DNA of 64,000 bases, from positions 1 to 64,000 of IMG/VR virus record IMGVR_UViG_3300028569_002417. One strand, given 5' to 3'. Numbering within the stretch: the stretch's first letter is position 1; every line of letters begins with the position of its first letter. Below, in pieces: positions 2,228 to 58,366 of this stretch. A program made the position numbers and the translations under genes. Under the pieces are notes generated by a model that had not been told where the DNA came from, did no database searches, and saw only the letters and a list, made by a program, of their open reading frames with translations.

Positions 2228-2406
2228 TAAATCACTTCTGGTTCTTCTTCTTTAATATTCCAACATTTAGAAGAATCAGGAAAACTAACTGGATATCCCA
2301 TTTTCCATTCTAAACTGATTCCAAGTTCATGTCTACCAAAGGCATAATGTGTCATATTTTTGTTCCAGCATTTTTCTTGGCTGATATGATAAATGTTTCT
2401 TGTCAT
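2224..2406 (-). CDS. small hypothetical protein (microprotein array, distal member)
   Basis: 60 aa, ATGA overlap with the upstream gene, two CWN motifs. Confidence 0.5.
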   Translation of the reverse strand: MTRNIYHISQEKCWNKNMTHYAFGRHELGISLEWKMGYPVSFPDSSKCWNIKEEEPEVIY

Positions 2407-2421
2407 GCTGTTTGTTCGCTT
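2393..2421. repeat. 29-bp direct repeat copy 1 (copy 2 at 3226-3254)
   Basis: atgtttcttgtcatgctgtttgttcgctt vs atgtttcttgttatgttgtttgttcgctt, 27/29 identical. Confidence 0.85.
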
Positions 2422-3176
2422 TTTAATTCTTGCAAAAGATTAAAAAGTCTTTGTTGGAATTTACGCCAAAGTGTTGGTTTAGTTTTCCAATGCATCAAAG
2501 CCTCATAATCATTTCTGTTGATTATGCTACTGGTTATATCGTAATTTCCAGTTCTAAGAAATTCTTCTAATACTGATATTATTCTAGATTTATATTGTTC
2601 GTCTGTGTCATAAAATCTAAATTTAATATCAGACAAGATGCCCATTCCATAAGCATCAAATTCTTCTGGTGATTTATAATAAGAAGACACATTTCCCTGT
2701 GAAAAAAATTGTTTTCTTTCTGATGCTTTTTTTGCCCTATTTTCAGGATTTATTATTTGTGGATTAAGTTTTGGGTCGATTGCATGTATTGTTTCGTGAG
2801 ATAGTGCATTAACTATTGGTGGTATTTTTCTTCCGTTAGTATTAATGAAAAAGTTTCTGTTTTCTCTGAATATAATCAGAGATCTAATATTCATAACAAT
2901 TTCATCTGTCTTTGGATTATAATGTGCCATCCAATTATCGCCCAAGTCTTGAAGATAAACTGGAACTGATCTTCTTCCATCTTTTCTTTTAATTTCTCCG
3001 ACAAGAACTTTTTTTATAAAAGTTCTTGTATACAAATCATATAAATCTTCTTCAGAAGACTTTGAAATGACTATTTTCAATATTTTATCAGCGACTAAAT
3101 AAACATCTTCTTGTTGATCTTTATCAAGCTGCATGAACTTGCTTTCATTTATCATCCATTTTTTGAAATTTAACAT
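2403..3176 (-). CDS. HExxH zincin-like metallopeptidase domain protein with capsid-targeting-like N-terminus
   Basis: HETIHAID and downstream YYKSPEEFDAY; N-terminus MLNFKKWMINES; ctaaataatttATG upstream. Confidence 0.7.
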   Translation of the reverse strand: MLNFKKWMINESKFMQLDKDQQEDVYLVADKILKIVISKSSEEDLYDLYTRTFIKKVLVGEIKRKDGRRSVPVYLQDLGDNWMAHYNPKTDEIVMNIRSLIIFRENRNFFINTNGRKIPPIVNALSHETIHAIDPKLNPQIINPENRAKKASERKQFFSQGNVSSYYKSPEEFDAYGMGILSDIKFRFYDTDEQYKSRIISVLEEFLRTGNYDITSSIINRNDYEALMHWKTKPTLWRKFQQRLFNLLQELKSEQTA

Positions 3177-3225: not shown

Positions 3226-3254
3226 ATGTTTCTTGTTATGTTGTTTGTTCGCTT
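3226..3254. repeat. 29-bp direct repeat copy 2
   Basis: matches 2393-2421. Confidence 0.85.
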
Positions 3255-3442
3255 CTTTTCCAGTGAAGTGAAAATGAATGTCTCTTGGTCCAATGAAGGG
3301 CGCAAGATCTAAACATAGACCAAGAGCAAAACCAACTCATTGACCATGATTTGGATTTTCTATTTTGTCTTATAATAATAGACGTTGACCTATCGCCAGA
3401 CCAGCAATGATTCTCTGATACATTTTCAGTGTGTCTGTGCAT
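3236..3442 (-). CDS. Trp/Ser-rich microprotein
   Basis: 68 aa, CWS and SWSMSWFCSWS motifs. Confidence 0.55.
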   Translation of the reverse strand: MHRHTENVSENHCWSGDRSTSIIIRQNRKSKSWSMSWFCSWSMFRSCALHWTKRHSFSLHWKRSEQTT

Positions 3443-3680
3443 TTTCTTTCCTATCTAAACAACTGCTTTTTGAACTATCTTTCCAGTGAAGAGATATTTT
3501 TACATCATGTATAATTTTCAAATTCCAGTTAGCAGATCTGTTTATATCAAATATATTTGATTCAGAATAATGTAAAACACCATGATCAGATCGACATAAT
3601 GTGTCGAAACTAAACTTAGAAAAAGAAATAAATCCCGTGAAAGGGAAGCATGACGATAAATTATTTCTTTTGAATATCAT
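3426..3680 (-). CDS. small protein of the array (MIFK start)
   Basis: 84 aa, ATGA-coupled, SLHWK motif shared with the neighbour. Confidence 0.55.
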   Translation of the reverse strand: MIFKRNNLSSCFPFTGFISFSKFSFDTLCRSDHGVLHYSESNIFDINRSANWNLKIIHDVKISLHWKDSSKSSCLDRKENAQTH

Positions 3681-3913
3681 GACTTAAAGCTTCTCTGCCA
3701 GACTTTTGAATCGGGATTTTGCTGGTAGGTCCATTCGCACCCTGTTGCTTCGAGCATTACTACATGAGCAATGCTTTCCAATTCTGTCTGATACTGATTG
3801 GCATCATCATATCTTAAGGTGTCTTCGGCTTTTTCAAGAGCCTCATGTCGATCATTTGCAATCACATCAATCGTGTGTGTTTGCGTTGACGTAATCTTAA
3901 CAGTGTACTTCAT
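3677..3913 (-). CDS. DpnD/PcfM-like small protein
   Basis: MKYTVKITSTQTHTIDVIANDRHEALEKAE pattern; GAGGAG SD before ATG at 3913. Confidence 0.55.
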   Translation of the reverse strand: MKYTVKITSTQTHTIDVIANDRHEALEKAEDTLRYDDANQYQTELESIAHVVMLEATGCEWTYQQNPDSKVWQRSFKS

Positions 3914-3924
3914 CTTACTACTCC

Positions 3925-4062
3925 TCAAAAAATCATATCATTCCAAGGATAAGAACCAATTATTCTAAACGATCTGAAATATCCACTATCACATCTGCCA
4001 AAACAACAGATGTATCCTTTGTTCAATCTGCTCAAAGGGAGAGAATTTATTTTGAATATCAT
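3925..4062 (-). CDS. 45-aa microprotein (not in ORF track)
   Basis: hand translation MIFKINSLPLSRLNKGYICCFGRCDSGYFRSFRIIGSYPWNDMIF; ATGA overlap. Confidence 0.55.
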   Translation of the reverse strand: MIFKINSLPLSRLNKGYICCFGRCDSGYFRSFRIIGSYPWNDMIF

Positions 4063-4250
4063 ATTTCGCCACCAAATTTAGACCAAGAATCATCATTGGT
4101 CCAAGACCAAGATTCTGTTCTGGAATTATACCAAGACCAAGACCTAGACTTAGCCCACATGCTCGACCATTGATCATATGGCCTAGACCAAGACCTAGAC
4201 ATAAAACACCAAGATCTACTAGACCTTTCCCAAAATATTTTCAAGATCAT
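4059..4250 (-). CDS. Trp/Ser-rich microprotein
   Basis: 63 aa MILK...SRSWSW...FGGEI. Confidence 0.6.
   Translation of the reverse strand: MILKIFWERSSRSWCFMSRSWSRPYDQWSSMWAKSRSWSWYNSRTESWSWTNDDSWSKFGGEI
4093..4176. repeat. 84-bp repeat copy 1 (copy 2 at 6290-6373)
   Basis: 78/84 identical by hand alignment. Confidence 0.85.
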
Positions 4251-4271
4251 AGATCACCATTAAACTCAGAC

Positions 4272-4445
4272 TTAGAACTTATGCCAAGACCTAGACCAAG
4301 ACCTAGACACAAACATGGACACAGACATAGTGCTAGAATTAGCCCACAGTCTTGACCAAATTGACCAAGACACAGACCAAAACCAAGGTCTAGACCAACA
4401 TCTAGAATAATTATCAACATAAAAAAATCTTTGCGATCTTATCAT
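4272..4445 (-). CDS. Trp/Ser-rich microprotein, 57 aa; FNGDL tail shifted out of frame
   Basis: MIRSQRFFYVDNYSRCWSRPWFWSVSWSIWSRLWANSSTMSVSMFVSRSWSRSWHKF; SKSEFNGDL* lies in another frame. Confidence 0.55.
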   Translation of the reverse strand: MIRSQRFFYVDNYSRCWSRPWFWSVSWSIWSRLWANSSTMSVSMFVSRSWSRSWHKF

Positions 4446-4594
4446 ATTTCACCATTATGATAAACAAGTGAATACCTAAACTCAGAACCAGACCAAGACT
4501 TACACCAAGACACAGACCAAAACTCATACCCAGACCAACATCTAGACACAGACCAAGGGTCAGAATGCTTGCACCCAAATGCTTTTAATGTCAT
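4442..4594 (-). CDS. Trp/Ser-rich microprotein, 50 aa
   Basis: MTLKAFGCKHSDPWSVSRCWSGYEFWSVSWCKSWSGSEFRYSLVYHNGEI; ATGA overlaps at both ends. Confidence 0.6.
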   Translation of the reverse strand: MTLKAFGCKHSDPWSVSRCWSGYEFWSVSWCKSWSGSEFRYSLVYHNGEI

Positions 4595-4773
4595 AATTCA
4601 CCATTAAACAAAAAAGACCTATCTGAAGACAAGGACAAGGACAAAGACCAAGACCAAGACCAAGTCACAGACAAAAACCAAGACCTAGCACCAGACTCAG
4701 ACCAAGAATTAGATCTAGACTTAGATTTAGACCAACATTTAACAATTGAAGAACTATTGGTTTTGATGATCAT
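4591..4773 (-). CDS. Trp/Ser-rich microprotein, 60 aa
   Basis: MIIK...WSWSWSLSLSLSS...FNGEL. Confidence 0.6.
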   Translation of the reverse strand: MIIKTNSSSIVKCWSKSKSRSNSWSESGARSWFLSVTWSWSWSLSLSLSSDRSFLFNGEL

Positions 4774-4892
4774 GTATTATCATACCAATGTTTAGGTCGA
4801 AAACAAGCCATGTTCCAAGACCAAGATCTTGTCCAACGCTGAAGCACAGACCAGCATCTAGATGACCTGTTACGATTGTTTTTGAAGATCAT
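4770..4892 (-). CDS. Trp/Ser-rich microprotein, 40 aa
   Basis: MIFKNNRNRSSRCWSVLQRWTRSWSWNMACFRPKHWYDNT; ATGA overlaps at both ends. Confidence 0.6.
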   Translation of the reverse strand: MIFKNNRNRSSRCWSVLQRWTRSWSWNMACFRPKHWYDNT

Positions 4893-5101
4893 ATTTCACC
4901 ATTAAACAAAGAATTATTAAACCAAGACCAAGACTCATATAAAGACCTAGACCAATTCTCAGAATCAGCCATAGACCGATTCCCACACCTAGAGTAATAA
5001 ACAGACCAAGACCAAGAGTTAGAGCAATAAACAGACCAAGACCAAGAAATAGATCTAGAGTTATGCTTAATGCGATTGTGACCAACTGTTTTGAAAATCA
5101 T
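4889..5101 (-). CDS. Trp/Ser-rich microprotein, 70 aa
   Basis: MIFK...SWSWSVY x2...LFNGEI. Confidence 0.6.
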   Translation of the reverse strand: MIFKTVGHNRIKHNSRSISWSWSVYCSNSWSWSVYYSRCGNRSMADSENWSRSLYESWSWFNNSLFNGEI

Positions 5102-5262
5102 AAATCACCATTAAACAAAGTCATGCAATCTTCTGAGGATTTAACTATGCTCTGTGACCAACATAGAGATTCTCCCCAAGACCACGAATTGTTCCACCAG
5201 ACTGGAGATCCCCACAGATTGTGTGCAAAAGTTCTACAACAACATTCGCCAGTCCTGAACAT
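5098..5262 (-). CDS. Trp/Cys-rich microprotein, 54 aa
   Basis: GAGGA SD; MFRTGECCCRTFAHNLWGSPVWWNNSWSWGESLCWSQSIVKSSEDCMTLFNGDL. Confidence 0.6.
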   Translation of the reverse strand: MFRTGECCCRTFAHNLWGSPVWWNNSWSWGESLCWSQSIVKSSEDCMTLFNGDL

Positions 5263-5282
5263 AGATCGAATCCTCTATGCAA

Positions 5283-5726
5283 CTACCGTAGAAACTTAAC
5301 CCATCTTTGCTTGGGTTCTGTTGGCTGATCCGTTCTATTAATGACCCCGTCATTTCTTTTCCATTGACCACCATTTGTTACTGCTTCCATAATCCAACCA
5401 CTTGCTTTGAGACTGGTGCCCGGTTCGCTTTGTAATATGTAGGTTTGTATTTTGGTGTAACCCATTTCTTTAGCAATCCGAGCGCAGGCACCATACAGTT
5501 TTGAACAAGCGTTAGGTGTGCCATCAGTGCATAGTCTTGCCACTTCAAGAGTTAAACCATCATCTGAAGCACGAGCAACTGGTCTGCCACAAATAGCAAT
5601 CCCCACATAGATATCATCTTTAGTTAAACCTATGCTAAACTTATGTCCAACGCTAGTTTTATGATGTCGATGCCATTGTAAAACAATTTCATTTGCTTTT
5701 TTTAAGACGATAGGAACAATCTTCAT
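5283..5726 (-). CDS. XF1762-family (Mom-related GNAT-fold) protein
   Basis: HRHH..VGHKFSIG, GRPVAR..DDG.TLEV.RLCTDGT.NACS.LY, E.GTSLKASGW. Confidence 0.85.
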   Translation of the reverse strand: MKIVPIVLKKANEIVLQWHRHHKTSVGHKFSIGLTKDDIYVGIAICGRPVARASDDGLTLEVARLCTDGTPNACSKLYGACARIAKEMGYTKIQTYILQSEPGTSLKASGWIMEAVTNGGQWKRNDGVINRTDQPTEPKQRWVKFLR

Positions 5727-5836
5727 TGCAATCCAATCTCTGCTATTTTACAGTATAATTAGGTCATTCCCTGCGTAAACTGTATTGATATAGTCCTTGC
5801 GAGTCTTTTTCTCAAAGACTATTTGTGTGTTCATCG

Positions 5837-6223
5837 TCACCACCAGCTACTATAAAAAACATAAAGACCATCACCTATTGCTCTTTTAGACTGATAGATG
5901 AAATCAATATCATTTTCAATCGATTTACTATCAGGAGGATTATCGCCAAAGAAAAAACCTTCTGTGTTAGGAAGATTACCTCCTCTGATATCTTTTTCTA
6001 AATCTTCCAAATCTTCTAGCGTAAGCACAACATAATCACAATTGAACTCTCCTGTCCCACCTTTTTTATAATAAAGTTTTTTCATCCATCCATGAAGATC
6101 ATGATGCTTTCTCCAGTAAAATAATTGATTTTTATCGAGTCCTTCCACAAAGACTGGATTTGTGTCTTTCAGTTCAACAACATCTTCTTTTTTTACTGAA
6201 TAAACAAACATGTCAAGTCCCAT
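5837..6223 (-). CDS. conserved phage protein (MGLDM family)
   Basis: MGLDMF...YWRKHHDLHGWM...FNC...GFFFG...YSSWW pattern; AGGAG SD. Confidence 0.8.
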   Translation of the reverse strand: MGLDMFVYSVKKEDVVELKDTNPVFVEGLDKNQLFYWRKHHDLHGWMKKLYYKKGGTGEFNCDYVVLTLEDLEDLEKDIRGGNLPNTEGFFFGDNPPDSKSIENDIDFIYQSKRAIGDGLYVFYSSWW

Positions 6224-6279
6224 AAGACACTCCTATATGCCTGACCAAAACATAGACCAACTCCAAGGCATGGACCTAT

Positions 6280-6492
6280 TTAATCGTTTTCATTGTTCCA
6301 AGACCAAGACTCAGTTCTAGAATTATACCAAGACCAAGACCTAGACATAGCCCACATGTTCGACCATTGATCAACACGAATCCACCATGTGGAACGAACA
6401 TGCCTGTATCCATCAATAGTGCGCCAATTAAACATCATATCAAATCTAGACCATTCTCTAGATTTATTATGCGTATTTGCTCTAAGAATCAT
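6280..6492 (-). CDS. Trp/Ser-rich microprotein (paralog of 4059-4250)
   Basis: likely start MILRANTH; shares DQWS.MWA.SRSWSWYNSRTESWSW. Confidence 0.6.
   Translation of the reverse strand: MILRANTHNKSREWSRFDMMFNWRTIDGYRHVRSTWWIRVDQWSNMWAMSRSWSWYNSRTESWSWNNEND
6290..6373. repeat. 84-bp repeat copy 2
   Basis: matches 4093-4176. Confidence 0.85.
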
Positions 6493-6586
6493 AATGATTC
6501 CAACTGGTAAATCACTCAAAGCGAAAAATGTCACAGCCCTGAATTTCATCGAAATCAGAACTATGACATTACATTAAACCAAGAAA

Positions 6587-6820
6587 TTATTTAGACCTTA
6601 TCTTCTTTTTCTGCTGATTCTGAGGATATCTGGATTGCTGAACGCTTTGCGATGAGTACTTAGGCGATTGCGGTCTTTGTTGAATATATCTGCTGCCAAC
6701 AGATTGCTGATTGCTTCTTGAACTAGCCGACCGGCTAGATGTGGAAGATGGTCATGTTGGGCAATTAGGACTTGACTGTGTCATAACCAAAATACTTGCT
6801 AAAAAACTTAAATTCAACAT
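6587..6820 (-). CDS. candidate secreted selenoprotein, 77 aa, CxxU motif (in-frame UGA at codon 23)
   Basis: AAGGAG SD; MLNLSFLASILVMTQSSPNCPT-UGA then 54 open codons to TAA; SECIS-like hairpin after the UGA. Confidence 0.7.
6723..6751 (-). promoter_or_regulatory. bacterial-type SECIS element (candidate)
   Basis: UGA + 13 nt + CUAGCC-GGUC-GGCUAG perfect hairpin; loop and spacing resemble E. coli fdhF SECIS. Confidence 0.7.
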
Positions 6821-6851
6821 TGTAAACTCCTTATCATGGTGACCCGACATT

Positions 6852-6880
6852 ATCATAATCGGGGGAAAATAAACTTGCAA
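6852..6880 (-). promoter_or_regulatory. sigma70-type promoter
   Basis: TTGCAA-17 nt-TATGAT upstream of the ATG at 6820. Confidence 0.65.
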
Positions 6881-6911
6881 CTAGATTCCAGCCATTTACC
6901 AAAGAAAATAA

Positions 6912-7871
6912 TTAAGCTTGTGCTGTTCTTTGACCGCCAGCATCATTTCTAACAACGGTATTGATATGGTCAGCCATAAATCTGATAAAATTATGTAATT
7001 TAGATTTATCATTATTATTATAATAATGTAAATAAACTTGCCTCAAGTCTTGTACATCCACACTATAATTTTCTGGATTCATTATCAAATCCTTGAGAGC
7101 CTCACCAAAATTTTCTTTCGTCAATATCTCACCTGTTTTCTTGTACCAATTGCGCTTTAGTTCACCCAAACGAACACCAATTTCGGCACTATCAGTGAGA
7201 TATTTTAAGCCGGGATCGTCATTAGAAAGACTCGACTGAAACAACATGTTTTGAGTTGAATGAGATAATTCGTGACGCAAAGTTCTCAAATTTGAACGAT
7301 TATTTACAACACAAAACTTTTGACCACCGGGTATTGAAGTGCAAAAACCTGTACTACCCGGTTCGGCACCGGGATACTTATTTGGGTCCATAAAAACAAC
7401 TGGAATAGGTTTGTCTAATTCACTAGTTCTCATGTCGGCAGCAGAAGGGATTCTGGGCGCTTCAAAGTCACCAATTTTATCAGGAGAATCATAAGCCTTG
7501 GCTGACATGTCACGCACTTTTTCGTAATCTTTTCCATATTCAGGAGAAATAGCTTCACTTGGTCTTATCATCTGAACATCATTGAAATTGATGTCCAATC
7601 CAGTTTTATTTTTGATGTGATCAATAACAGATTGAATAACTGGACTTGTTGCAGACCTGACAATTGCTGGTTTCGGTGCCAAATCTACATCCATACGCTT
7701 AGGAGACGCACTACCCAATGCCAAAGCCGCACCAATACCTCCAATAATTCTTCTGACCCTGCCACTCATATCCTTGAAGAATTCGTCGTATTGAACCTCT
7801 GTCAGCATTTGAGAGAAAAGTTCAGGATCACGATTCTCAAGAAATTTAACGAATGTAAGATTAGTTTGCAT
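6912..7871 (-). CDS. HExxH metallopeptidase-like protein with capsid-targeting-like N-terminus
   Basis: TLRHELSHSTQ, downstream E in YLTDSAEIG; gtaaatattttcATG upstream; N-terminal hydrophobic segment. Confidence 0.65.
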   Translation of the reverse strand: MQTNLTFVKFLENRDPELFSQMLTEVQYDEFFKDMSGRVRRIIGGIGAALALGSASPKRMDVDLAPKPAIVRSATSPVIQSVIDHIKNKTGLDINFNDVQMIRPSEAISPEYGKDYEKVRDMSAKAYDSPDKIGDFEAPRIPSAADMRTSELDKPIPVVFMDPNKYPGAEPGSTGFCTSIPGGQKFCVVNNRSNLRTLRHELSHSTQNMLFQSSLSNDDPGLKYLTDSAEIGVRLGELKRNWYKKTGEILTKENFGEALKDLIMNPENYSVDVQDLRQVYLHYYNNNDKSKLHNFIRFMADHINTVVRNDAGGQRTAQA

Positions 7872-7886
7872 GAAAATATTTACATG

Positions 7887-8402
7887 TCAAGCAGCATAAA
7901 TTTCCAGAAATTTGTTTATATCTGCAAGAAGATTAATATTTTGCTCTACTTTTTCTTTTTCCCAATTCCACCATTCTATTTTCAGTAATTGATCTATTAC
8001 ATTTTTTTCAAATCTGTATCTAATTATTTTTGCAGGATTTCCTGCAACTATAGAAAAAGGCGGCACATCTTTAGTTATAACTGCCCTAGCACCAACTATA
8101 GAACCATGACCTATAGTCACGCCTCCAAATATCATTGCTTCAGTTCCAATCAAACAATCAGAACCAATTATGATTGGACCCCTGTCCTTTCCTATTGGAT
8201 AATTGGAATTAGGATAATGTGATCTAAATCTGAAAGTGCTTACAGTAGGATGATGCATACAAGCATGATCTATCGGTCCACCACACAAGAATGTCACTCT
8301 CCTAGCTATTCCTGAATAATTTCCAACAGTTATCTGGTAATTAGGGAAATGCATAATACAGTCTGGCGCAATACTCGAAAGAGTACCAAGAGTTATTCCC
8401 AT
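7887..8402 (-). CDS. CatB/xenobiotic-type hexapeptide O-acetyltransferase
   Basis: hexapeptide repeats, VITKDVPPFSIVAGNPAKIIRYRF, LLKIEWWNW; start uncertain. Confidence 0.85.
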   Translation of the reverse strand: MGITLGTLSSIAPDCIMHFPNYQITVGNYSGIARRVTFLCGGPIDHACMHHPTVSTFRFRSHYPNSNYPIGKDRGPIIIGSDCLIGTEAMIFGGVTIGHGSIVGARAVITKDVPPFSIVAGNPAKIIRYRFEKNVIDQLLKIEWWNWEKEKVEQNINLLADINKFLEIYAA

Positions 8403-8614
8403 GACTCACTCTCAAAAGAGAATTCTTCAAAAGGAAATATTTTTTCTTCAATGAAACAATGACAAAAAACTGAATTCATGTCAAATGTTCCACACAAAAT
8501 AATTCTTTGTGACCAACCTCTAGAATAACAAAAATCATTCCAATTTGAATGATATAAATCTTTCTTAAAAAGAAAGATTGACCAAAAATTATTTGCAGAA
8601 CCAATGGTTTTCAT
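8393..8614 (-). CDS. aromatic/Cys-rich microprotein
   Basis: MKTIGSANNFWS...WNDFCYSRGWS, similar to neighbours. Confidence 0.5.
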   Translation of the reverse strand: MKTIGSANNFWSIFLFKKDLYHSNWNDFCYSRGWSQRIILCGTFDMNSVFCHCFIEEKIFPFEEFSFESESWE

Positions 8615-8707
8615 GTGTATCCCGCCTAACAACTGCAAAATAAAATTCTGCCCCTATTATATCATAAAAAAAACGAAAATCAACAGTTTTATAATATGAT
8701 TGGGGCT

Positions 8708-8872
8708 TCATTGATCGAAAGACCAACAAGCAGAAAAAATGTAACCACGATGGTGTTCAGATATAATGGTAAATCCAGAGAAAGAACAATCGTCATTCCA
8801 TGACCTAGAAACTGGTTTGGTCAAAGACCAACAACAATTATTGTTGTAGTCAGAATTTGCCCTGAGAATCAT
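8708..8872 (-). CDS. Trp/Cys/Ser-rich microprotein, 54 aa (not in track)
   Basis: MILRANSDYNNNCCWSLTKPVSRSWNDDCSFSGFTIISEHHRGYIFSACWSFDQ; GGAG SD. Confidence 0.65.
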   Translation of the reverse strand: MILRANSDYNNNCCWSLTKPVSRSWNDDCSFSGFTIISEHHRGYIFSACWSFDQ

Positions 8873-8889
8873 TTATAAACTCCATATGA

Positions 8890-9051
8890 TCATTCGTTGT
8901 AAGACCAACACGAACAACAAATGTGACCATTCTGAACAGAGAAAATTGTAAATCCAGAGTAAGAGCAATAATTGTTCCATGATCTGGAAACCGATATATC
9001 TCCAGACCAACACCAGTTGGTGTGATTGTAAGAATTTTCTCTAAGAATCAT
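8890..9051 (-). CDS. Trp/Cys/Ser-rich microprotein, 53 aa, tandem paralog of 8708-8872
   Basis: MILRENSYNHTNWCWSGDISVSRSWNNYCSYSGFTIFSVQNGHICCSCWSYNE. Confidence 0.65.
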   Translation of the reverse strand: MILRENSYNHTNWCWSGDISVSRSWNNYCSYSGFTIFSVQNGHICCSCWSYNE

Positions 9052-52342: not shown

Positions 52343-52993
52343 ATGATACATCTTAATTTCTCCAACTGGCTACAAATCGAAGAACAGTCAACTGTAGGCA
52401 CTGAATTAGTTAATGCTTCACAGGTTCTTGCAAAATATGCAAAGATAAAAGATAGCATTGAACTTGTCAGAATGTATGACCAAAAATTAGATCCAGATCA
52501 TAAACTTTTATACAATATATCAACAATTGCAGATCTGCACTCAGGTAAAGCATTTGGTATGTTCATTAACACGGAAAACTCAAATGTCATTGGGCAAGAT
52601 GTAATGGATCAAATCAGGAAAATTTATCCGAACGACCCATTAATTGATAAGAAAGTCCAAAAACTTTCAAGGAAACAAATATTGGATCACCTTCCAGATG
52701 AAGCAAAAAAAACAATCAACCCCAAAAAAATCATTGCATCATCAATAATAAGAATCGATGTTGATGATCACATCAAGAAATATGGAGACAGTCCTGCTGC
52801 AATAATAGAAATTGCTAGCACGATAGCTCACGAAGCAACACATGTAATCGAATATCGTGACAAAGGTGAAACATTTGATGGACCCGGAACTATGGTTCAA
52901 CAAGCAGAATCATCATTCAAAGCATGGGTAAAGCAAAATTGGAATATGCTCTCTCAAAGATTTGGATTCAGCGGACCATATCCCTTTTCCTAG
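52343..52993 (+). CDS. HExxH metallopeptidase-like protein with capsid-targeting-like leader
   Basis: MIHLNFSNWLQIEE; ASTIAHEATHVIE. Confidence 0.7.
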   Translation: MIHLNFSNWLQIEEQSTVGTELVNASQVLAKYAKIKDSIELVRMYDQKLDPDHKLLYNISTIADLHSGKAFGMFINTENSNVIGQDVMDQIRKIYPNDPLIDKKVQKLSRKQILDHLPDEAKKTINPKKIIASSIIRIDVDDHIKKYGDSPAAIIEIASTIAHEATHVIEYRDKGETFDGPGTMVQQAESSFKAWVKQNWNMLSQRFGFSGPYPFS

Positions 52994-53022
52994 TTTACAA
53001 AAAAACATGTTCAACATATAAT
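52994..53022 (+). promoter_or_regulatory. sigma70-type promoter
   Basis: TTTACA-17-TATAAT, then AAGGAG SD. Confidence 0.7.
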
Positions 53023-53039
53023 CACTACCATCAAGGAGA

Positions 53040-53633
53040 ATGATTATGAAGAACAAAGGTTTTGAAGCTTGGAAAGCTCGTCTCGACTGGTTCAAAAGCG
53101 AATACCCATTTGGACCAATTCAACGATTTACAAATGAAGATGGACGATTGCATCGTGACAATGGACCAGCACTCATTAGCCCAACCCGAATCACATACTA
53201 CCAAAACGGCAGAAAACATGGAATCGATGCCGATAAATTTGGTTCAATCAACTTTTATTACGAAAACATCAGGATTCCACCTCATTTTTACCACAAGCCA
53301 GAAAATTTAACCATTGATGAGGTTTTCTCTCACAGCAACGCCGAAGTTCGGTATGTGGGAATGAAAATAATTGGTTTTGATAAGGTCATGGAAGACTCAA
53401 GAACCAAAATCATTGATCGGTGCAATGACACAGGAATGGTTCTTTTCCAAATCGATGGTATTTTCGATGAACCAGTAAGCTATCTAAAAGTCATAAACAG
53501 CACTCAAGAACCAGATGGTAGCTATAAAAACTACTACCTTTGCGTTCCACCTGAAGCAAAAAAATGCAAAGAAGCTGTTGCATGGACATTCGGAATGAAT
53601 GCAGATGAATACCAACCAGCACAAGAAACTTAA
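53040..53633 (+). CDS. DUF6745-like protein
   Basis: GRLHRDNGPAL, NAEVR, VINSTQEPDGSYK.YYL.VPP...EAVAWTFG...YQP..ET. Confidence 0.8.
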   Translation: MIMKNKGFEAWKARLDWFKSEYPFGPIQRFTNEDGRLHRDNGPALISPTRITYYQNGRKHGIDADKFGSINFYYENIRIPPHFYHKPENLTIDEVFSHSNAEVRYVGMKIIGFDKVMEDSRTKIIDRCNDTGMVLFQIDGIFDEPVSYLKVINSTQEPDGSYKNYYLCVPPEAKKCKEAVAWTFGMNADEYQPAQET

Positions 53634-53663
53634 GATATTTGAATACATATCGCAAGGAGTATT

Positions 53664-54392
53664 ATGAAAAAATTAAACGAAATGCAATATTTGGCTGGCG
53701 TAATCAATCAAGATCATTATTATGATGCGGGTCATGATAAGAATTCAATTAAAAAAATGACCCGTAGAATCAATAGAATTATTGAAAATATCAACGAAGC
53801 ATTAGAAGATGCAAAAAAATCAGCAGAATCAGAAGAATCAGAAAAAAATGCTGATGTTTCAAAGGAAAAATCTTCCGCTGTAGGATTTTTCAACCATCTA
53901 AGAAACGAAATTAAAGAAGATGAAATCGCCAGAATGTCACCAGCACAAATCGCCCAAAAAGGCGAAAAAGCTAAAAGCAAAATAGCAGAATTCAAACGAC
54001 AATTTGAAGCAAAATATCCAGAAGCCGCCTCTAAACTGAAAAAAGAAGCACAAAGTGATGCTCAGTCATTAAGAGGAGAACTACCTCCCACAACAGAAAG
54101 CATTATGGGAATGCTGGGCAAAGGCGCAGCTATGATCGGAGGAGCATTATTCTGGGCTGCATGGAAAGCAATTAAATTCATCTTGCTTCAAATATTAAAG
54201 GTAGTCATAAAAATTGCCAAAAACATCTTCACAACCCACGGCAAAGGCGTACTTCCTTTTGTCACAATATGTGGAGCAATCATATTCCCTTGGCTAGGAT
54301 TTGTTCAAGATCCTATTTTTCTCATCCCTGCTGGCATTTACTATATGGTCATAACAATTGGCGCTCTACTAAAAATCGGCGAACACGAGTAA
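53664..54392 (+). CDS. membrane protein with LAGVIN N-terminal motif
   Basis: MKKLNEMQYLAGVIN; C-terminal TM helices. Confidence 0.7.
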   Translation: MKKLNEMQYLAGVINQDHYYDAGHDKNSIKKMTRRINRIIENINEALEDAKKSAESEESEKNADVSKEKSSAVGFFNHLRNEIKEDEIARMSPAQIAQKGEKAKSKIAEFKRQFEAKYPEAASKLKKEAQSDAQSLRGELPPTTESIMGMLGKGAAMIGGALFWAAWKAIKFILLQILKVVIKIAKNIFTTHGKGVLPFVTICGAIIFPWLGFVQDPIFLIPAGIYYMVITIGALLKIGEHE

Positions 54393-54401
54393 AGATTTTT
54401 A

Positions 54402-54430
54402 TTTACAACACGACGAAATCCGCATATACT
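54402..54430 (+). promoter_or_regulatory. sigma70-type promoter
   Basis: TTTACA-17-TATACT. Confidence 0.65.
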
Positions 54431-54464
54431 AAAAATGCGACGATGAAACCAAAAGGAGAAATCC

Positions 54465-54785
54465 ATGCAGGCAAGACAAGGTGACATTTTCTTCAAGTCT
54501 GTCAAGGATATCCCATCCAAGACTAAACCACACAAAACCAATATCCTCGCCTATGGCGAGGTTACTGGTCATAGCCACAAAATTTCATCTCCATCAATCA
54601 GTGAGATGGAATCTGTAGTAGACGAAAAGGGCGACATCTATGTCCGCTCACTAAAATGTGACGTTACTATCACTCACGATGAACATAATTCCATAACACT
54701 CCCAATGGGGGAATGGATCTGTGTTTCTCGCCAAAAGGAATATGATCCCCTTTCGGCAAATCGTGAACGTCAAGTGGCCGATTAA
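54465..54785 (+). CDS. RQGD...GEVTGH protein (usual DUF6745 partner)
   Basis: RQGDI, LAYGEVTGHSH, HDEH, RQKEY...RQVAD. Confidence 0.8.
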   Translation: MQARQGDIFFKSVKDIPSKTKPHKTNILAYGEVTGHSHKISSPSISEMESVVDEKGDIYVRSLKCDVTITHDEHNSITLPMGEWICVSRQKEYDPLSANRERQVAD

Positions 54786-54818
54786 TCAATAGCTATCACC
54801 ATAAAGGAAGGATCTATC

Positions 54819-55133
54819 ATGGCTGTTAAGCGAAGCTTTGCCCGTGTATCACCAGAAAAGTCAACTGGCAGCAATATGGCTGCAATTATGCAAGAGTACA
54901 TTGGACAGCCTGTGGCTATCCTCTGCGCTCGTTTTAATTATCGGGGAATCCTGAGTAAGGTAACAGACGATTGTGTCATCCTAGCCCAAGCTAGGGCCGT
55001 AGAAAGCAGCGGCGCTAGCAATAGCGAAAAACCTAACTCAGAAGATCCAATCGGAAGCTCAGTTATTATCAGCTTAAATGCTGTGGAACTGATTTATCAG
55101 CCGGAATGGTGTCGGTTTGAAATGGATAATTAA
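54819..55133 (+). CDS. Sm/LSm-like fold protein
   Basis: helix then YIGQPVAI...YRGIL..V.DDCVIL..A (Sm1-like) and VIISLNAVE (Sm2-like). Confidence 0.55.
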   Translation: MAVKRSFARVSPEKSTGSNMAAIMQEYIGQPVAILCARFNYRGILSKVTDDCVILAQARAVESSGASNSEKPNSEDPIGSSVIISLNAVELIYQPEWCRFEMDN

Positions 55134-55168
55134 TGCATCAAATAGGCTGTTAAACAAAAAATCATTCA

Positions 55169-55199
55169 CCACTCGCAATAAAATGTGAGTGGTTTTTTT
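55169..55199 (+). terminator. intrinsic terminator
   Basis: ccactcgca-ataaaa-tgtgagtgg followed by T7. Confidence 0.7.
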
Positions 55200-55225
55200 G
55201 TTGATTTAATCTATAATTAAAAGTG

Positions 55226-55396
55226 ATGAATTCAGTTGCTATTTCTAATTGTTGGTTTATGCAATGCAATATCTGTCAAAACATTTCTTTCTGTTGGGAG
55301 CTAAATTGGAATGTTTCGATGATTGGCAAAGATGATTGGAAAAGAAATAGTTTTATGAGTAGTTGTTTCAAAGGCGATAAATGTTATTTCAAATAA
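55226..55396 (+). CDS. Trp/Cys-rich microprotein, 56 aa (not in track)
   Basis: MNSVAISNCWFMQCNICQNISFCWELNWNVSMIGKDDWKRNSFMSSCFKGDKCYFK. Confidence 0.45.
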   Translation: MNSVAISNCWFMQCNICQNISFCWELNWNVSMIGKDDWKRNSFMSSCFKGDKCYFK

Positions 55397-55398
55397 TC

Positions 55399-55584
55399 AT
55401 GAAAAAGAAATATTTCAATAAAAATTGGCCAAACACTTGGTGTCATAGCAGATCGTTTTCTTTTGATTCTAATTTATCTTCTGTTACATTGGTTCGATAC
55501 TCAGGAAACTTTAAGTGGGATGATGTTAGGAGCAGTGATTGGAGCATGCTTCGATCTAGTTCAGAGTGCTGGAAGAGTCATTAA
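55399..55584 (+). CDS. Trp/Ser-rich microprotein
   Basis: WCHSRSFS, DWSMLRSSSECW. Confidence 0.45.
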   Translation: MKKKYFNKNWPNTWCHSRSFSFDSNLSSVTLVRYSGNFKWDDVRSSDWSMLRSSSECWKSH

Positions 55585-56311
55585 CTTCCCACCATAATTT
55601 GTTTATATCAGTATTCTCACGTTTTTTCCAAGGTTTTTCAAGAGTGTAATGGATGACACAAATTTCATTCCTTAGTTCTTTCCATTTAATTGGAGCTACA
55701 TCAAAAACTCTTCGTGTGAAATTATAGATTGGTTTTAGTCTATGCCATTTTTTGGAAAAATAATGGTTTAGAAGACCTTGATCAGATGGATCTTCTGGTG
55801 TTTCGACAGTATCTTTCATTACAAGAAGTTCTTCAAATTTTTTCTTATCAGGTCTGAGTATCATTACCCCAGAATTAAAATAATCACCTCTCCACCCTGC
55901 TCTAATTGGCTTTCCTGTTTTTGCATCTAAAATAGTTTGAAAACTTGATCCTGCTGCAAAATCTGCTTCTATTTCAAAAAGATGATCAATATTTTTAATT
56001 ACCAAAACGTCTGCATCAAAATAAATTATTTTATCAAAATCTTGATTCCACAGATGGATTTTATTGTAACAATTATTGGCAAAGTTTGGATTTTCTCTAT
56101 AAGGTTGTGGCTTACAGGTTTTTGATCCAAGATATTCTGTGTCAATTATTGTGCAGCCAACAGACTGAAGCTTTTTTTTATTTTCTTCAGTAATGTTAAT
56201 GCTGATTACATGAAATGGATATTGTGTGATTTTTTGCAATGACTTTGCAAGACAATATACTCCGGGAGTAAAGTCATCACTCGCAACAGTAAAATATGCA
56301 AATTTAGGCAT
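55556..56311 (-). CDS. GT8 glycosyltransferase (glycogenin-like)
   Basis: KIIYFDADVL..NIDHLF, FNSGVM, DQGLLN, IHY...KPW. Confidence 0.92.
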   Translation of the reverse strand: MPKFAYFTVASDDFTPGVYCLAKSLQKITQYPFHVISINITEENKKKLQSVGCTIIDTEYLGSKTCKPQPYRENPNFANNCYNKIHLWNQDFDKIIYFDADVLVIKNIDHLFEIEADFAAGSSFQTILDAKTGKPIRAGWRGDYFNSGVMILRPDKKKFEELLVMKDTVETPEDPSDQGLLNHYFSKKWHRLKPIYNFTRRVFDVAPIKWKELRNEICVIHYTLEKPWKKRENTDINKLWWEVNDSSSTLN

Positions 56312-56426: not shown

Positions 56427-57422
56427 TTATTGATTAATTTCAACTCCTTTATTTTTTAACCATTTCAGAAATTCATTTTTATTGTAAGACTTATTTTTTT
56501 TGCTATTTTCCTTAGCACACAAAGGCTGTAAATTTTCTATACAGTTAATTAATTTAATATCTTTTATTCCATGTTCAATAAATGCAGCTATAGGGAAAAT
56601 ATGATCAACATGCCATTTCTTATTACATACTTTTGGCCAATTAGGATGAGACTCTATGTGTTGCTTAAATTGCTCACTAGTGTAACCTAACATTTCATAA
56701 GAATGATCAATCTTAGACTCTTTAGTATATTTCAATACAGCATATATCATGCTGTAACACTTTTTCTTAAAACTCAATTCTTCTTTATATTCTTCTCTGT
56801 CTTTTCTAAAACAAGAAGAATTTTCTCCTGTATTTTTCAAATAACCACATTCTTTACAATGTGTTTTTAGAAATTTCATTTGACTTAGAACACAATAAGA
56901 TATTTTGCCACATTTACATTTATATTTTATTTTTTGTTTCGGACTTGTATATGCTTCTTCTAAAAGCTCACATTGGTTATCTGCAAAAATTTTGCGAATT
57001 TCATCAATGCTTGTTTTAACGCCACGCTTACACTTTGAACACCTACAACCGTTACGAAAATGATCTATTCTTATTTTAGAAATATTTCCACACTCACACC
57101 TATAAAGCATGGGTGTTTGGCATCCTTTGTAACCTTCTAAAAGTTCGCATCCACCATCTTGAAAAATCTTTTTTGCTTGTTCGTCTGTCATTTTCATTCG
57201 ACCAACGAAACCTTTAGATTTTCCTACTTGTTCATATTGACAATCACTACATTTTCTTCCGTCTTTGACTGCCGATAAAGAAAGTTCTGTTACTTTTCCA
57301 CAAACGCATTTTGCTGGTAATGGCTTCCATGTTGCACCATATCCAGACAACCATTCATCTGCTAAGCAGACATAACCATGTTGCTCAAAAATCTTCTTAA
57401 CATCTTCAATTGTGTGGCTCAT
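56427..57422 (-). mobile_element. free-standing HNH homing endonuclease with repeated Zn-ribbon modules
   Basis: three CxCG...CxxC repeats; WHVDHIFPI...NLQPLCAKENSKKN; AAGGAG SD. Confidence 0.88.
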
Positions 57423-57460
57423 AATCCTACTCCTTATCATATATAAGTAAAGTAGGAAAT

Positions 57461-57519
57461 AATTCACCAAAAATATTACATCATTTTTATGGGCAATAAA
57501 TCTCCGTAGCGGTTTAATA
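57461..57519. repeat. 59-bp direct repeat copy 2
   Basis: matches 56344-56402. Confidence 0.92.
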
Positions 57520-58366
57520 GAGAATCTTGCCAATCCTTTTTGTCTTGAATTCCTTCGGCGAGTATAGCTGCTCCATCTAGTTGTACTCCGCCACCGGGAC
57601 CGGGTGGATTTCCGATTCTTGAGCGTATTCTTCCAAGAATAATTTTAGCAAAAGCGAGAGCTCCTTCTTGCATTGCTTGGGTTACGATTTGGAAGTCTGG
57701 TTTTCTTTGGAGGTATCTAACAACGACTGGGTATGTTCGATAAGGTACTGGATAGAGTTTAATGTGTCTATAACCGCCGAGGTATTCCCATCCTCCTTGT
57801 TGTCCAGATATACGGTTGTACATATCTTCGTATTGTTTATAGAGAACCCAATCGCTCATTTTCCCCCATACTGGTTGTTGTGGGTTGATTCCCCCTGCGA
57901 TTGAGCCATAAGCTCCTGCTCCCATGTATTCGAGAGGTATTACTCCTCCGAGGTCTGATGCTGAGAATGCGTAGTTTGCAGTTTCTTTATATGAAATTTG
58001 GCGAACGAATCCGACATCGGGAGGAAGTTCGTAGACGCTTTGTCCGGGTGATGTATAAAATGAATAGTATTGGAAGTACTCTGCTGGGGCATAATCTTCA
58101 AATATTTGCAAAGAAAAATCTATACTATTTTCAAGTTGTTGGTCATCTAATTCAAGTGGTAGTACAGGTGCTCCGAGCATTGTTAGAACATAATCTTTGA
58201 TTTGTTCACGAACTTTTTCACGATTTTTGCGTGGTCCGATATTATAAATAGGGTCTGTTGGTCCTAGTCCTCCACAACTTCCTCCACCATTTCCGCAACC
58301 ACTTTTACATGACAATGAATTGTATTGATCTTGAGTTGGTCTTGGGATATAAATTGTGTTGCTCAT
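57476..58366 (-). CDS. neck protein, T4 gp13-like
   Basis: REQIKDYVLTMLGAPV..LELDDQQL, ALA.AK..LG.IRS, PGGGVQLDG. Confidence 0.85.
   Translation of the reverse strand: MSNTIYIPRPTQDQYNSLSCKSGCGNGGGSCGGLGPTDPIYNIGPRKNREKVREQIKDYVLTMLGAPVLPLELDDQQLENSIDFSLQIFEDYAPAEYFQYYSFYTSPGQSVYELPPDVGFVRQISYKETANYAFSASDLGGVIPLEYMGAGAYGSIAGGINPQQPVWGKMSDWVLYKQYEDMYNRISGQQGGWEYLGGYRHIKLYPVPYRTYPVVVRYLQRKPDFQIVTQAMQEGALAFAKIILGRIRSRIGNPPGPGGGVQLDGAAILAEGIQDKKDWQDSLLNRYGDLLPIKMM

What the first reader, a model, noticed from the sequence alone, without database searches (positions are those of the whole stretch)
53040..55584. DUF6745 / RQGD-GEVTGH / Sm-like module followed by Trp-Cys-Ser microproteins
Seen: sigma70 promoters at 52994 and 54402 drive a DUF6745-like gene, its usual His-motif partner and an Sm/LSm-like gene. 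After a terminator come two W/C/S-rich micro-ORFs like those at 3-9 kb, and a membrane-protein gene splits the module. Established: Sm folds form RNA-binding rings. Inference: an uncharacterised early ribonucleoprotein or host-takeover system in which the microproteins may be variable partners of the Sm-like protein.
Basis: inference. Interest (0 to 1): 0.6.

Follow-up and report, generated by a model that had tools for sequence, protein, structure and literature searches.

The report
Conserved phage Sm-fold/DUF6745 gene module
This is a real three-gene cluster, conserved in large lake phages (a DUF6745 protein, its histidine-rich partner and an Sm-fold protein) and genetically linked to arrays of tiny tryptophan/serine-repeat genes; what it does is unknown, and the proposed early RNA-binding takeover role has no support yet.

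Summary
53046-53633 encodes a short DUF6745 protein (Pfam E 7e-31). 54465-54785 encodes its partner, R, with universally invariant RQGD / GE.TGH.H / H.EH / Q.E motifs. 54819-55133 encodes S, whose predicted structure is a full Sm fold (Z 9.9, rmsd 1.7 A to archaeal SmAP).

R followed by DUF6745 (D) is an old two-gene unit. It occurs in many phages, including Microcystis phage Ma-LMM01 gp175/gp174, and in multiple copies in Melainabacteria and cyanobacteria. The Sm-fold gene, a shortened D and arrays of Ser/Trp-repeat micro-ORFs occur together only in one lineage of low-GC lake phages.

- The arrays touch or surround the triad in most sublineages.
- In this genome the main array lies at 3.2-9.1 kb.
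- Elsewhere D is long and carries hypervariable tetrapeptide repeats.

The two local micro-ORFs occur only in close relatives. The first looks coding and the second is doubtful. Both share the arrays' even Trp spacing but not their sequence.

The "early RNP / host takeover" reading is unsupported. Canonical Sm RNA-pocket residues are absent, the R-D pair is also bacterial, and its Ma-LMM01 homologues are not early genes. My best guess, at low confidence, is a metal-dependent R-D effector with the Sm ring as adaptor for the variable microproteins or their repeat RNA.

The parts
52994..53022 (+). sigma-70-like promoter before the DUF6745 gene
   Evidence: Matches 11 of 12 positions. The -35 and -10 hexamers are kept in L006 and L005 while the spacer diverges in L005.
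53040..53633 (+). short-form DUF6745 protein (D); likely start at ATG 53046, 195 aa
   Evidence: Pfam PF20530 E 6.7e-31, matching profile positions 59-206. Homologues start MKN, and an AAGGAG Shine-Dalgarno motif lies 7 nt before 53046. Found next to R in 28 of 31 Sm-bearing IMG/VR loci.
53664..54392 (+). inserted gene for a coiled-coil protein with C-terminal hydrophobic segments (variable cargo, not part of the core)
   Evidence: Present only in the two closest relatives, one of which has a second, inverted paralogue. Only low-complexity or coiled-coil hits in Pfam and PADLOC. DNA contigs of another lake population break at 53663.
54402..54430 (+). sigma-70-like promoter before R and S
   Evidence: Matches 10 of 12 positions. 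L008 has a perfect consensus promoter at the homologous place.
54465..54785 (+). R: small all-beta protein with an invariant polar/His cluster (RQGD, GE.TGH.H, H.EH, Q.E, C-terminal D)
   Evidence: phrog_27831 E 3e-8. 206 word-search homologues. The invariant residues hold across phage, bacterial and Ma-LMM01 members. Model pLDDT is 70.7 with no fold match in the PDB.
54819..55133 (+). S: Sm-fold protein with a conserved acidic loop between strands 3 and 4
   Evidence: AlphaFold2 pLDDT 83. Top Foldseek hits are all Sm/LSm. VIA Z is 9.9 with rmsd 1.7 A over 72 of 74 residues of 1jri_B. The family has 198 clusters at 50% identity, some tandem-duplicated.
55168..55193 (+). intrinsic-terminator-like hairpin after S
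   Evidence: 10-bp stem, 6-nt loop and a T run.
55223..55396 (+). micro-ORF 1 (57 aa; W/C/S/N-rich), probably coding
   Evidence: No indels in L005 or L006. Variable columns by codon position are 2/1/10, p 0.0016. Only two near-identical homologues among 5.8 billion proteins. W spacing is even.
55381..55584 (+). micro-ORF 2 (67 aa, or 61 aa from ATG 55399; S/W-rich, basic); coding status doubtful
   Evidence: Variable columns are 5/7/13, p 0.04, and it evolves about twice as fast as its neighbours. It overlaps the GT8 gene's 3' end by 29 nt. W spacing is even.
3236..9051 (-). main array of Ser/Trp-repeat micro-ORFs of this genome (linked class, about 45 kb away)
   Evidence: 9 of the 14 W-rich small ORFs in the 225-kb record lie here, against 0-1 in shuffles. 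In relatives the orthologous array lies 0.1-7 kb from S. Orthologue pairs show a third-position bias, for example 3/4/19.

Best explanation
Shown:
- The locus is a conserved, co-directional phage gene cluster.
- Its core is an ancient two-gene unit: a small all-beta protein with an invariant His/Asp/Glu cluster (R) and a DUF6745 protein (D). This unit occurs in many phages and, in multiple copies, in Melainabacteria, cyanobacteria and Verrucomicrobia.
- In one lineage of large, low-GC lake phages, three further things appear together. D is cut down to its C-terminal ~195 aa. An Sm-fold protein (S) joins the pair. Tandem, translationally coupled arrays of basic Ser/Trp-repeat microprotein genes lie beside or around the triad, although in this genome the array is about 45 kb away and two atypical micro-ORFs sit next to S.
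- Long D proteins elsewhere carry, in the same polypeptide, hypervariable short-period repeats such as ([DA]SV[RWG])n.

Inferred:
- R and D act together as one metal-dependent effector.
- The repeats are a fast-evolving specificity element.
- In this lineage that element is supplied in trans by the microproteins.
- S, probably a ring, is the adaptor that holds either the microproteins or the repeated (UCUUGG)n RNA that encodes them.
- The rapid turnover points to a phage-host or phage-phage conflict rather than a housekeeping role.
For: Conservation of the core:
- The triad lies on one strand in 24 or more of 27 IMG/VR loci, in the orders D-R-S, S-D-R and R-S-D. No other gene is shared across the lineages.
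- R lies directly upstream of D in at least 30 bacterial loci, several per genome, and in Ma-LMM01 as gp175/gp174.
- An ESM Atlas cluster of 366-aa viral DUF6745 proteins matches the R model at TM 0.66, a possible fusion.
- R's invariant residues are R4 Q5 G6 D7, G31 E32 T34 G35 H36 H38, H71 E73 H74, Q90 E92 and D106, across all groups.
- The S model has an Sm fold.

The lineage-specific set:
- With S present, the D open frame is 195-245 aa. With S absent it is 293-749 aa, with no overlap between the two ranges.
- SW arrays occur in 15 of 31 loci with S and 1 of 48 without (Fisher p 7e-7; not corrected for phylogeny).
- In L019 and L023 the array ORFs flank S and sit between R and S.
- In whole records of 144-181 kb, nearly all SWSW pattern hits cluster 1.3-7 kb downstream of S (two stray hits in G005).
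- Bacterial R-D loci have 1 SW ORF in 784 kb, against 48 in 194 kb of viral loci.

The arrays look like genes:
- 78 of 88 array ORFs have a Shine-Dalgarno-like motif, against 22% of all ATGs. 39 of 88 have an ATG overlapping the previous TGA.
- Orthologue pairs show a third-position bias.

Composition and repeats:
- W-W spacing is even: 116/143/124 for spacings 2/4/6, against 8/13/13 for 1/3/5. Median net charge is +5.
- S is net acidic, with invariant E62, E75, D76 and E90.
- Long-D repeats differ between near-identical proteins.

Expression:
- An RNA-library contig identical to 54715-54865 bridges the R/S junction.
Against: - No binding has been shown. The one complex prediction (S with R) gave no verdict.
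- R has no recognisable fold and its model is only moderate (pLDDT 70.7), so 'metal enzyme' rests on motifs alone.
- All S-bearing loci belong to one lineage, so the S / short-D / SW-array correlation may be one historical event plus synteny.
- Here and in L012's record the array is about 45-55 kb from the triad. Several S-bearing loci show no array within 6-7 kb.
- More distant S relatives occur with R only, or alone.
- The resemblance between SW repeats and long-D repeats is compositional and periodic, not demonstrated homology.
- The RNA-library contigs could be DNA carry-over.
Confidence: 0.4

Rival explanations
1. S forms an Sm/Hfq-like ring that binds RNA, and the module is an early ribonucleoprotein or host-takeover device. 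A sharper version is that the ring binds the hexanucleotide-repeat (UCUUGG)n transcripts of the micro-ORF arrays and controls their translation or stability.
For: - The S model has a full Sm fold, N-terminal helix included, and matches RNA-bound archaeal SmAPs.
- Sigma-70-like promoters are conserved before D and R.
- S co-occurs with arrays whose DNA is a 6-nt repeat.
- Phage LSm-like proteins with an RNA-stability phenotype are known, namely T4 GoF(D25Y) (PMC12152347).
Against: - No Sm-clan Pfam model reaches its cut-off: SM-ATX 15.4 against 29.8, DUF2642 14.7 against 22.7.
- The loop-3 Asn and loop-5 Arg-Gly of the uridine pocket are replaced (read against the ranges; approximate).
- The protein is net acidic, and its most conserved part is an acidic loop on the outside of the fold.
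- There is no Rfam RNA, tRNA or stable structure nearby.
- Timing is unknown, and the R-D homologues in Ma-LMM01 are not in its early block.
Confidence: 0.2
2. There is no functional link. The triad and the SW arrays are merely neighbours in a plastic accessory region of one phage lineage, and R-D, S and the microproteins act independently.
For: - All S-bearing loci are one lineage.
- The array is about 45-55 kb away in this genome and in L012's record.
- Unrelated cargo is inserted in or near the module: the membrane gene, GT8 and HNH.
- Some S homologues lack D or both partners nearby.
Against: - Adjacency survives reshuffling of the triad order and Sm-protein divergence down to 54% identity.
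- Array ORFs are interleaved between R and S in L019 and L023.
- Short D is perfectly tied to the presence of S.
Confidence: 0.25
3. The two micro-ORFs at 55223-55584 are not genes. They are chance open frames in the 360-nt spacer between the convergent S and GT8 genes.
For: - They lie after a terminator and have no strong Shine-Dalgarno motif or promoter.
- Only two near-identical homologues of micro-ORF 1 exist.
- Micro-ORF 2 evolves fast with a weak codon-position signal (5/7/13) and overlaps GT8.
- There is no sequence similarity to the array ORFs.
Against: - There are no indels over 333 nt in two relatives, and micro-ORF 1 has 10 of 13 variable columns at codon position 3.
- All 7 W-W spacings are even, as in the arrays.
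- L008 has an array-type MIMK micro-ORF at the same place after S.
- The region has no stable RNA fold (z = +1.65).
Confidence: 0.25
4. R-D is a selfish or conflict cassette, either toxin-antitoxin-like or a defence/anti-defence pair. Phages have captured it, and S is a lineage-specific regulator of it.
For: - It is a two-gene, translationally coupled cassette in unrelated chromosomal contexts, with 3-5 copies in single Melainabacteria and cyanobacterial genomes.
- It is widespread on phage contigs, with 282 hits in IMG/VR.
- One partner carries hypervariable repeats.
Against: - There are no PADLOC, NCBIfam or Pfam toxin/antitoxin matches.
- Both partners are highly conserved rather than one being labile.
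- There is no experimental phenotype.
Confidence: 0.15

Closest known systems
Archaeal SmAP / eukaryotic Sm and LSm proteins (e.g. 1jri, 1loj, 1i4k)
   Same: The fold of the predicted S model is the same: an N-terminal helix plus a bent five-stranded sheet. Z is 9.0-9.9 and rmsd 1.7-2.6 A over nearly the whole reference chain.
   Different: - There is no sequence-level membership.
- The uridine-pocket residues are not kept.
- A long, invariant acidic loop lies between strands 3 and 4.
- Ring formation and RNA binding are untested.
T4 GoF / MotB.1 / Frd.2, the LSm-like fold proteins of Tevenvirinae (PMC12152347)
   Same: They are small phage proteins with a predicted LSm-like fold and no established function. 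An RNA role is suspected.
   Different: - A tblastn search of S against 50,697 phage records found nothing.
- The T4 proteins are not reported with DUF6745/R partners or with repeat microprotein arrays.
Microcystis phage Ma-LMM01 gp175 / gp174 (and MaMV relatives)
   Same: It is the same R-then-D gene pair. gp175 is 29% identical to R and keeps all the invariant residues. gp174 matches DUF6745 at E 1.3e-14.
   Different: - D is long (378 aa).
- There is no Sm-fold gene and no SW array.
- The pair lies between the DNA polymerase and UDG genes, and is not in the early block.
Long DUF6745 proteins of other phages and of Melainabacteria/cyanobacteria
   Same: They share the same C-terminal domain and the same upstream R partner.
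   Different: They are 293-749 aa long, with an N-terminal domain. In many phages they also carry hypervariable tri- or tetrapeptide repeats, which the short D of this lineage lacks.
Hfq
   Same: It is a small Sm-superfamily protein of bacteria and some phages, and a ring that reads repeated RNA motifs.
   Different: The best structural matches of S are SmAP and LSm chains, and no Hfq chain appears in the listed rows. No Hfq Pfam model appeared among the hits at E <= 1.

Membership tests
Pfam DUF6745 (PF20530) | Profile score above the curated gathering cut-off | tested here: met
   107.6 bits against 27, E 6.7e-31. Only profile positions 59-206 of 206 are covered, so this is a short form. The six-frame search of the whole record confirms it.
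phrog_27831 / 'RQGD' partner family (no Pfam model) | Profile match and the invariant motif set RQGD, GE.TGH.H, H.EH, Q.E | tested here: met
   PHROG E 3.3e-8. All the invariant residues are present and shared with bacterial and Ma-LMM01 members.
Sm/LSm superfamily | Sm fold: N-terminal helix followed by a strongly bent five-stranded antiparallel sheet | tested here: met
   This was tested on a predicted model only (pLDDT 83). Foldseek probability is 1.00 to Sm/LSm chains. VIA Z is 9.9, and all 50 top rows are Sm/LSm/SmAP.
Sm/LSm superfamily | Sequence membership in an Sm-clan family (score above cut-off) | tested here: not met
   SM-ATX scores 15.4 against 29.8, DUF2642 14.7 against 22.7 and DUF6897 12.5 against 23.9. 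There are no PDB sequence hits even with the family profile.
Sm/LSm superfamily | Canonical uridine pocket: aromatic/His and Asn in loop 3, Arg-Gly in loop 5 | tested here: not met
   In the family alignment the corresponding places read D51, V53/I54 and S85-L86, with no Asn or Arg-Gly. Correspondence was taken from the aligned ranges and from the published AF-Sm1 pocket (His37, Asn39, Arg63, recalled from memory), so it is approximate.
Sm/LSm superfamily | Hexameric or heptameric ring; RNA binding | not tested
RNA binding needs an experiment.
Cupin-type metal-binding barrels (considered for R) | Cupin fold and two-motif signature | tested here: not met
   No cupin appears among the Foldseek or VIA matches. 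The best Z is 4.9, to an unrelated lipoprotein. The motif spacing does not fit. The model quality is moderate, so this is not a firm exclusion.
RiPP precursor arrays with a maturase (considered for the SW micro-ORFs) | A recognisable modifying enzyme (for example radical SAM) in the cluster | tested here: not met
   There is no PF04055 match in the 225-kb record. No gene besides D, R and S is shared across the lineages.
Known anti-phage defence / toxin-antitoxin families | Match to a PADLOC or NCBIfam model | tested here: not met
   There is no match for D, R or S.

The most novel reading that the evidence does not exclude
DUF6745 systems are a widespread, undescribed class of phage and bacterial conflict modules. 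In them a conserved R-D metal-dependent effector is aimed by a hypervariable short-period repeat 'barcode' with W/R/G at the variable place.

In one lineage of large lake phages the barcode has been split off into dozens of separately translated Ser/Trp-repeat microproteins. An Sm-fold ring presents these microproteins to the effector. This would be the first Sm-family protein used as a peptide adaptor for a diversifying microprotein library.
Probability: 0.2. Interest if true: 0.85.

Novelty: new variant of a known kind. Interest (0 to 1): 0.6.

Why it matters
DUF6745 and its R partner are catalogued but unstudied. No paper in the searched library mentions DUF6745.

This work turns three anonymous ORFs into a defined, testable unit:
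- a two-gene core shared by phages and Melainabacteria/cyanobacteria;
- clear candidate catalytic residues;
- a structural link to fast-evolving repeats.

It also exposes a class of translationally coupled Ser/Trp-repeat microprotein genes that standard annotation would dismiss as low-complexity noise.

If the link is functional, it would be a new way for phages to build a diversifiable specificity library, and a new use for the Sm fold. If it is not, the module is still a useful marker for an uncultured lineage of large freshwater phages that was found in 13 lake studies.

Tried and rejected
- Complex prediction of S with R: no verdict, score 0.00. This is not evidence either way.
- Fold of R: Foldseek against the PDB gave nothing (best E 0.28). 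The VIA wide search gave a maximum Z of 4.9. PDB sequence and profile searches for R and S found nothing meaningful.
- NCBIfam and PADLOC: nothing for D, R or S.
- DNA search of the locus against 50,697 phage records: no match. A protein search with S against the same records: no match.
- Rfam and tRNA scans of the window: nothing. The RNA fold of the 55194-55560 spacer is less stable than shuffles (z +1.65), so a structured RNA was rejected.
- BLASTP of the two local micro-ORFs against 105 array ORFs: nothing significant after composition correction. The Atlas search of an array peptide gave no usable hit.
- Radical SAM in the 225-kb record: none, so a RiPP reading gained no support.
- Idea that S derives from the N-terminal part of long D: hhalign probability 0.15. 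Rejected.
- Idea that R is fused in the 425-aa D of MW202476: hhalign found nothing. No R-D fusion occurs among the 79 loci, so the Atlas fusion hit stays a lead.
- Three HExxH ORFs near the array and the triad: no detectable mutual homology.
- Relatives of a virus record cannot be drawn by the genome search.
- Literature: no hits for DUF6745, and none for Trp-rich phage microprotein arrays.
Full report
**Context.** The window is the first 64 kb of a 225.5-kb IMG/VR virus record with about 35% G+C, which CheckV rates as 52% complete. Near-identical DNA occurs in lake and freshwater metagenomes from 13 studies. PHROGs recognises few of its genes. There is no DNA match among 50,697 deposited phage genomes.

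**Anatomy of 52.9-55.6 kb.**
- An HExxH-motif ORF ends at 52993.
- A promoter-like site at 52994-53022 matches 11 of 12 positions.
- A DUF6745 gene follows.
- Next comes a 242-aa gene for a coiled-coil protein with C-terminal hydrophobic segments.
- A second promoter-like site lies at 54402-54430 (10 of 12).
- A 106-aa gene (R) follows, then a 104-aa gene (S), then a hairpin plus T-run terminator at 55168-55193.
- Two small ORFs fill the spacer before a convergent GT8 glycosyltransferase gene.

Promoter-like sites as a class are no more frequent here than in shuffles. However, both sites keep their hexamers in relatives while the spacers change, and L008 has a perfect consensus promoter at the homologous position. 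The DUF6745 gene most likely starts at 53046, where an AAGGAG motif lies 7 nt upstream and homologues begin MKN.

**The three proteins.**
- D matches Pfam DUF6745 at E 6.7e-31, but only over profile positions 59-206.
- R matches only phrog_27831, a family of unknown function.
  - A set of polar residues is invariant in phage, bacterial and Ma-LMM01 members alike: R4 Q5 G6 D7; G31 E32 T34 G35 H36 H38; H71 E73 H74; Q90 E92; and the C-terminal D106.
  - I read this as a metal or catalytic site (inference).
  - Its AlphaFold model is all-beta and of moderate confidence (pLDDT 70.7). It has no convincing counterpart in the PDB.
- S has only sub-threshold hits to Sm-clan Pfam families.
  - A 44-sequence alignment gives a confident model (pLDDT 83).
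  - Its best matches are exclusively Sm/LSm/SmAP chains: Foldseek probability 1.00, and VIA Z up to 9.9 at rmsd 1.7 A over 72 of 74 residues.
  - The Sm fold is therefore supported.
  - The residues that make the canonical uridine pocket are not present. The protein is net acidic. Its most conserved segment is an acidic loop between strands 3 and 4 (the correspondence is approximate).
  - An exhaustive profile search finds 198 clusters at 50% identity, some with two Sm-like domains in tandem.

**The module is conserved.**
- Among 27 IMG/VR loci found with S, D, R and S lie on one strand within about 2 kb in nearly all contigs that are long enough. The orders are D-R-S, S-D-R or R-S-D, and S identity falls as low as 54%.
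- Clustering all ORFs of 70 aa or more across 22 loci finds no other gene shared by all lineages.
- The membrane-protein gene occurs only in the two closest relatives, one of which carries a second, inverted copy. In another lake population the assembly breaks exactly at 53663. It is inserted cargo.

**R-D is older and wider than the triad.**
- A scan of one genome per prokaryotic species found 114 DUF6745 relatives. They are mostly in Candidatus Obscuribacterales/Melainabacteria, cyanobacteria and Verrucomicrobia, often with 3-5 per genome.
- In at least 30 of the 77 truly bacterial loci, an R homologue lies immediately upstream on the same strand.
- There D is 490-518 aa with DUF6745 at its C-terminus.
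- S is absent from these loci, and W/S micro-ORFs are essentially absent: 1 in 784 kb.
- IMG/VR holds 282 R relatives.
- Microcystis phage Ma-LMM01 has the pair as gp175 (R) and gp174 (DUF6745, E 1.3e-14), between its DNA polymerase and UDG genes. That phage's only early genes are gp054-gp063 (PMC5780444), so the homologous pair is not early there.
- An ESM Atlas cluster of 366-aa viral DUF6745 proteins matches the R model at TM 0.66. This hints at fusions, but I saw none among the 79 loci.

**The micro-ORFs.**

Genome-wide, 9 of the 14 small ORFs that are rich in W and in W+C+S lie at 3.2-9.1 kb on the minus strand. Shuffled sequence gives 0-1. They are built on (TCTTGG)n-like repeats.

Contrary to my expectation, the same kind of ORF is abundant next to the triad in other lineages, on the same strand:
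- directly after S in L013-L018, L022 and L026/27;
- on both sides of S, and between R and S, in L019 and L023;
- 3-6 kb downstream of S (about 5 kb past R in L025) in L008, L010 and L025.

In whole records of 144-181 kb, the SWSW DNA pattern clusters only 1.3-7 kb downstream of S, apart from two stray single hits in G005.

These ORFs look like genes:
- 78 of 88 have a Shine-Dalgarno-like motif, against 22% of all ATGs.
- 39 of 88 start with an ATG that overlaps the previous TGA.
- 40 of 102 begin MIRK.
- True orthologue pairs show a third-position bias, for example 3/4/19.

The products have a median length of 60 aa. They are 21% Ser, 12% Trp and 8% Arg, with a median net charge of +5. Consecutive Trp residues are spaced evenly: 116/143/124 for spacings 2/4/6, against 8/13/13 for 1/3/5. 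This is the signature of a two- or four-residue repeat.

**A presence/absence matrix.** Over 79 IMG/VR loci that carry R:
- S is present in 31 loci, and 15 of those have SW arrays by a strict filter.
- S is absent in 48 loci, and 1 of those has a single such ORF (Fisher p 7e-7).
- The D open frame is 195-245 aa wherever S is present and 293-749 aa wherever it is absent, without overlap.

All S-bearing loci are one low-GC lineage, so these are correlated characters of a clade and not independent events.

**Long D proteins carry their own hypervariable repeats.**
- In many S-less phages the region before DUF6745 is a run of tri- or tetrapeptide repeats. Examples are ([DA]SV[RWGM])n, (DAR/DAL/AAR)n, (AAWDAR)n and ([DAV]AT[HRYD])n.
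- The order of variable residues differs between otherwise near-identical proteins.
- This prompts the main inference. In the S lineage the repeat element was lost from D and is supplied by the SW microproteins, which share the even period and the W/R/G alternation.
- This is a resemblance, not shown homology.

**The two local micro-ORFs.**
- Both are kept without indels in the two close relatives. The first has 10 of 13 variable columns at codon position 3 (p 0.0016). The second has 13 of 25 (p 0.04) and evolves about twice as fast as its neighbours.
- Micro-ORF 1 has only two near-identical homologues among 5.8 billion proteins.
- Neither resembles the array ORFs in sequence. Neither has the MI[RFL]K start.
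- All 7 of their W-W spacings are even, against 48:50 in ordinary proteins of the window.
- L008 has an array-type micro-ORF in the same position.
- I regard the first as probably coding, the second as doubtful, and both as degenerate members of the class at best.

**Expression.**
- One metatranscriptome contig is identical to 54715-54865 and bridges the R/S junction.
- Another covers 54276-54606 at 95% identity.
- A third lies in the GT8 gene.
- These are assembled contigs from RNA libraries. They show neither strand nor level, and DNA carry-over is not excluded.

**Verdict.**
- The specific functional claims (RNP, early, host takeover) have no positive support and some evidence against them.
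- Function remains inferred. My preferred model is a metal-dependent R-D effector whose variable specificity element is provided in trans by the microproteins, with the Sm-fold protein as adaptor. A live alternative is that the ring binds the repeat RNA.

Noticed in passing
window 3236-9051 (-): This is a tandem array of about 14 Ser/Trp-repeat micro-ORFs on (TCTTGG)n-like DNA. Two other frames (GLGLGL, LVLV) stay open as well. The ORFs are coupled by ATGA overlaps behind a GGTGA-type ribosome-binding site.
   Followed up: partly
window 2403-3176 (-), 6912-7871 (-), 52355-52993 (+): These are three ORFs with an HExxH motif and no Pfam hit. Two flank the SW array and one ends at the promoter of the triad. 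Pairwise BLASTP shows no homology between them.
   Followed up: partly
window 5283-5726 (-) and 7887-8402 (-): A Mom-like ORF (PF25680, E 4e-4, below cut-off) and a hexapeptide-repeat transferase are interspersed with the micro-ORF array.
   Followed up: no
window 55556-56311 (-): A family-8 glycosyltransferase gene converges on the module and overlaps micro-ORF 2 by 29 nt. It is conserved only in the two closest relatives.
   Followed up: partly
window 53663: In a DNA run from another lake population, two long contigs end at this base with unlike continuations. The joint between DUF6745 and the membrane-protein gene is therefore a population-level breakpoint.
   Followed up: no
L144 7329-8759; L148, L159, L186, L188 and others: Long DUF6745 proteins of other phages contain 30-50 tetrapeptide repeats, [DA]SV[RWGM]. 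The order of these differs between near-identical proteins. The variable codons differ by single bases, (C/T/G)GG and G(A/C)T.
   Followed up: partly
L193 249-857: This is a 202-aa protein with two Sm-like domains in tandem, in the gene order R-S-D. Several such tandem forms top the exhaustive profile search.
   Followed up: partly
Genome-contig loci L041, L055, L066, L070, L074, L084, L095, L104, L107: Single Melainabacteria/Obscuribacterales genomes hold 4-5 or more DUF6745 loci. R was detected upstream in four of the nine loci listed here, all set in unrelated chromosomal contexts.
   Followed up: partly
window 56427-57533 (-): This is an HNH endonuclease-like gene (phrog_559, E 3e-11) with several CxxC pairs. 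It lies between the GT8 gene and a head-tail adaptor-like gene.
   Followed up: no
R and D families (A3, A6): Both partners have fixed C-terminal residues. R always ends in D, usually as V-[AILM]-D. D ends ...QE[TS], or ...[VY]ET in two members.
   Followed up: no
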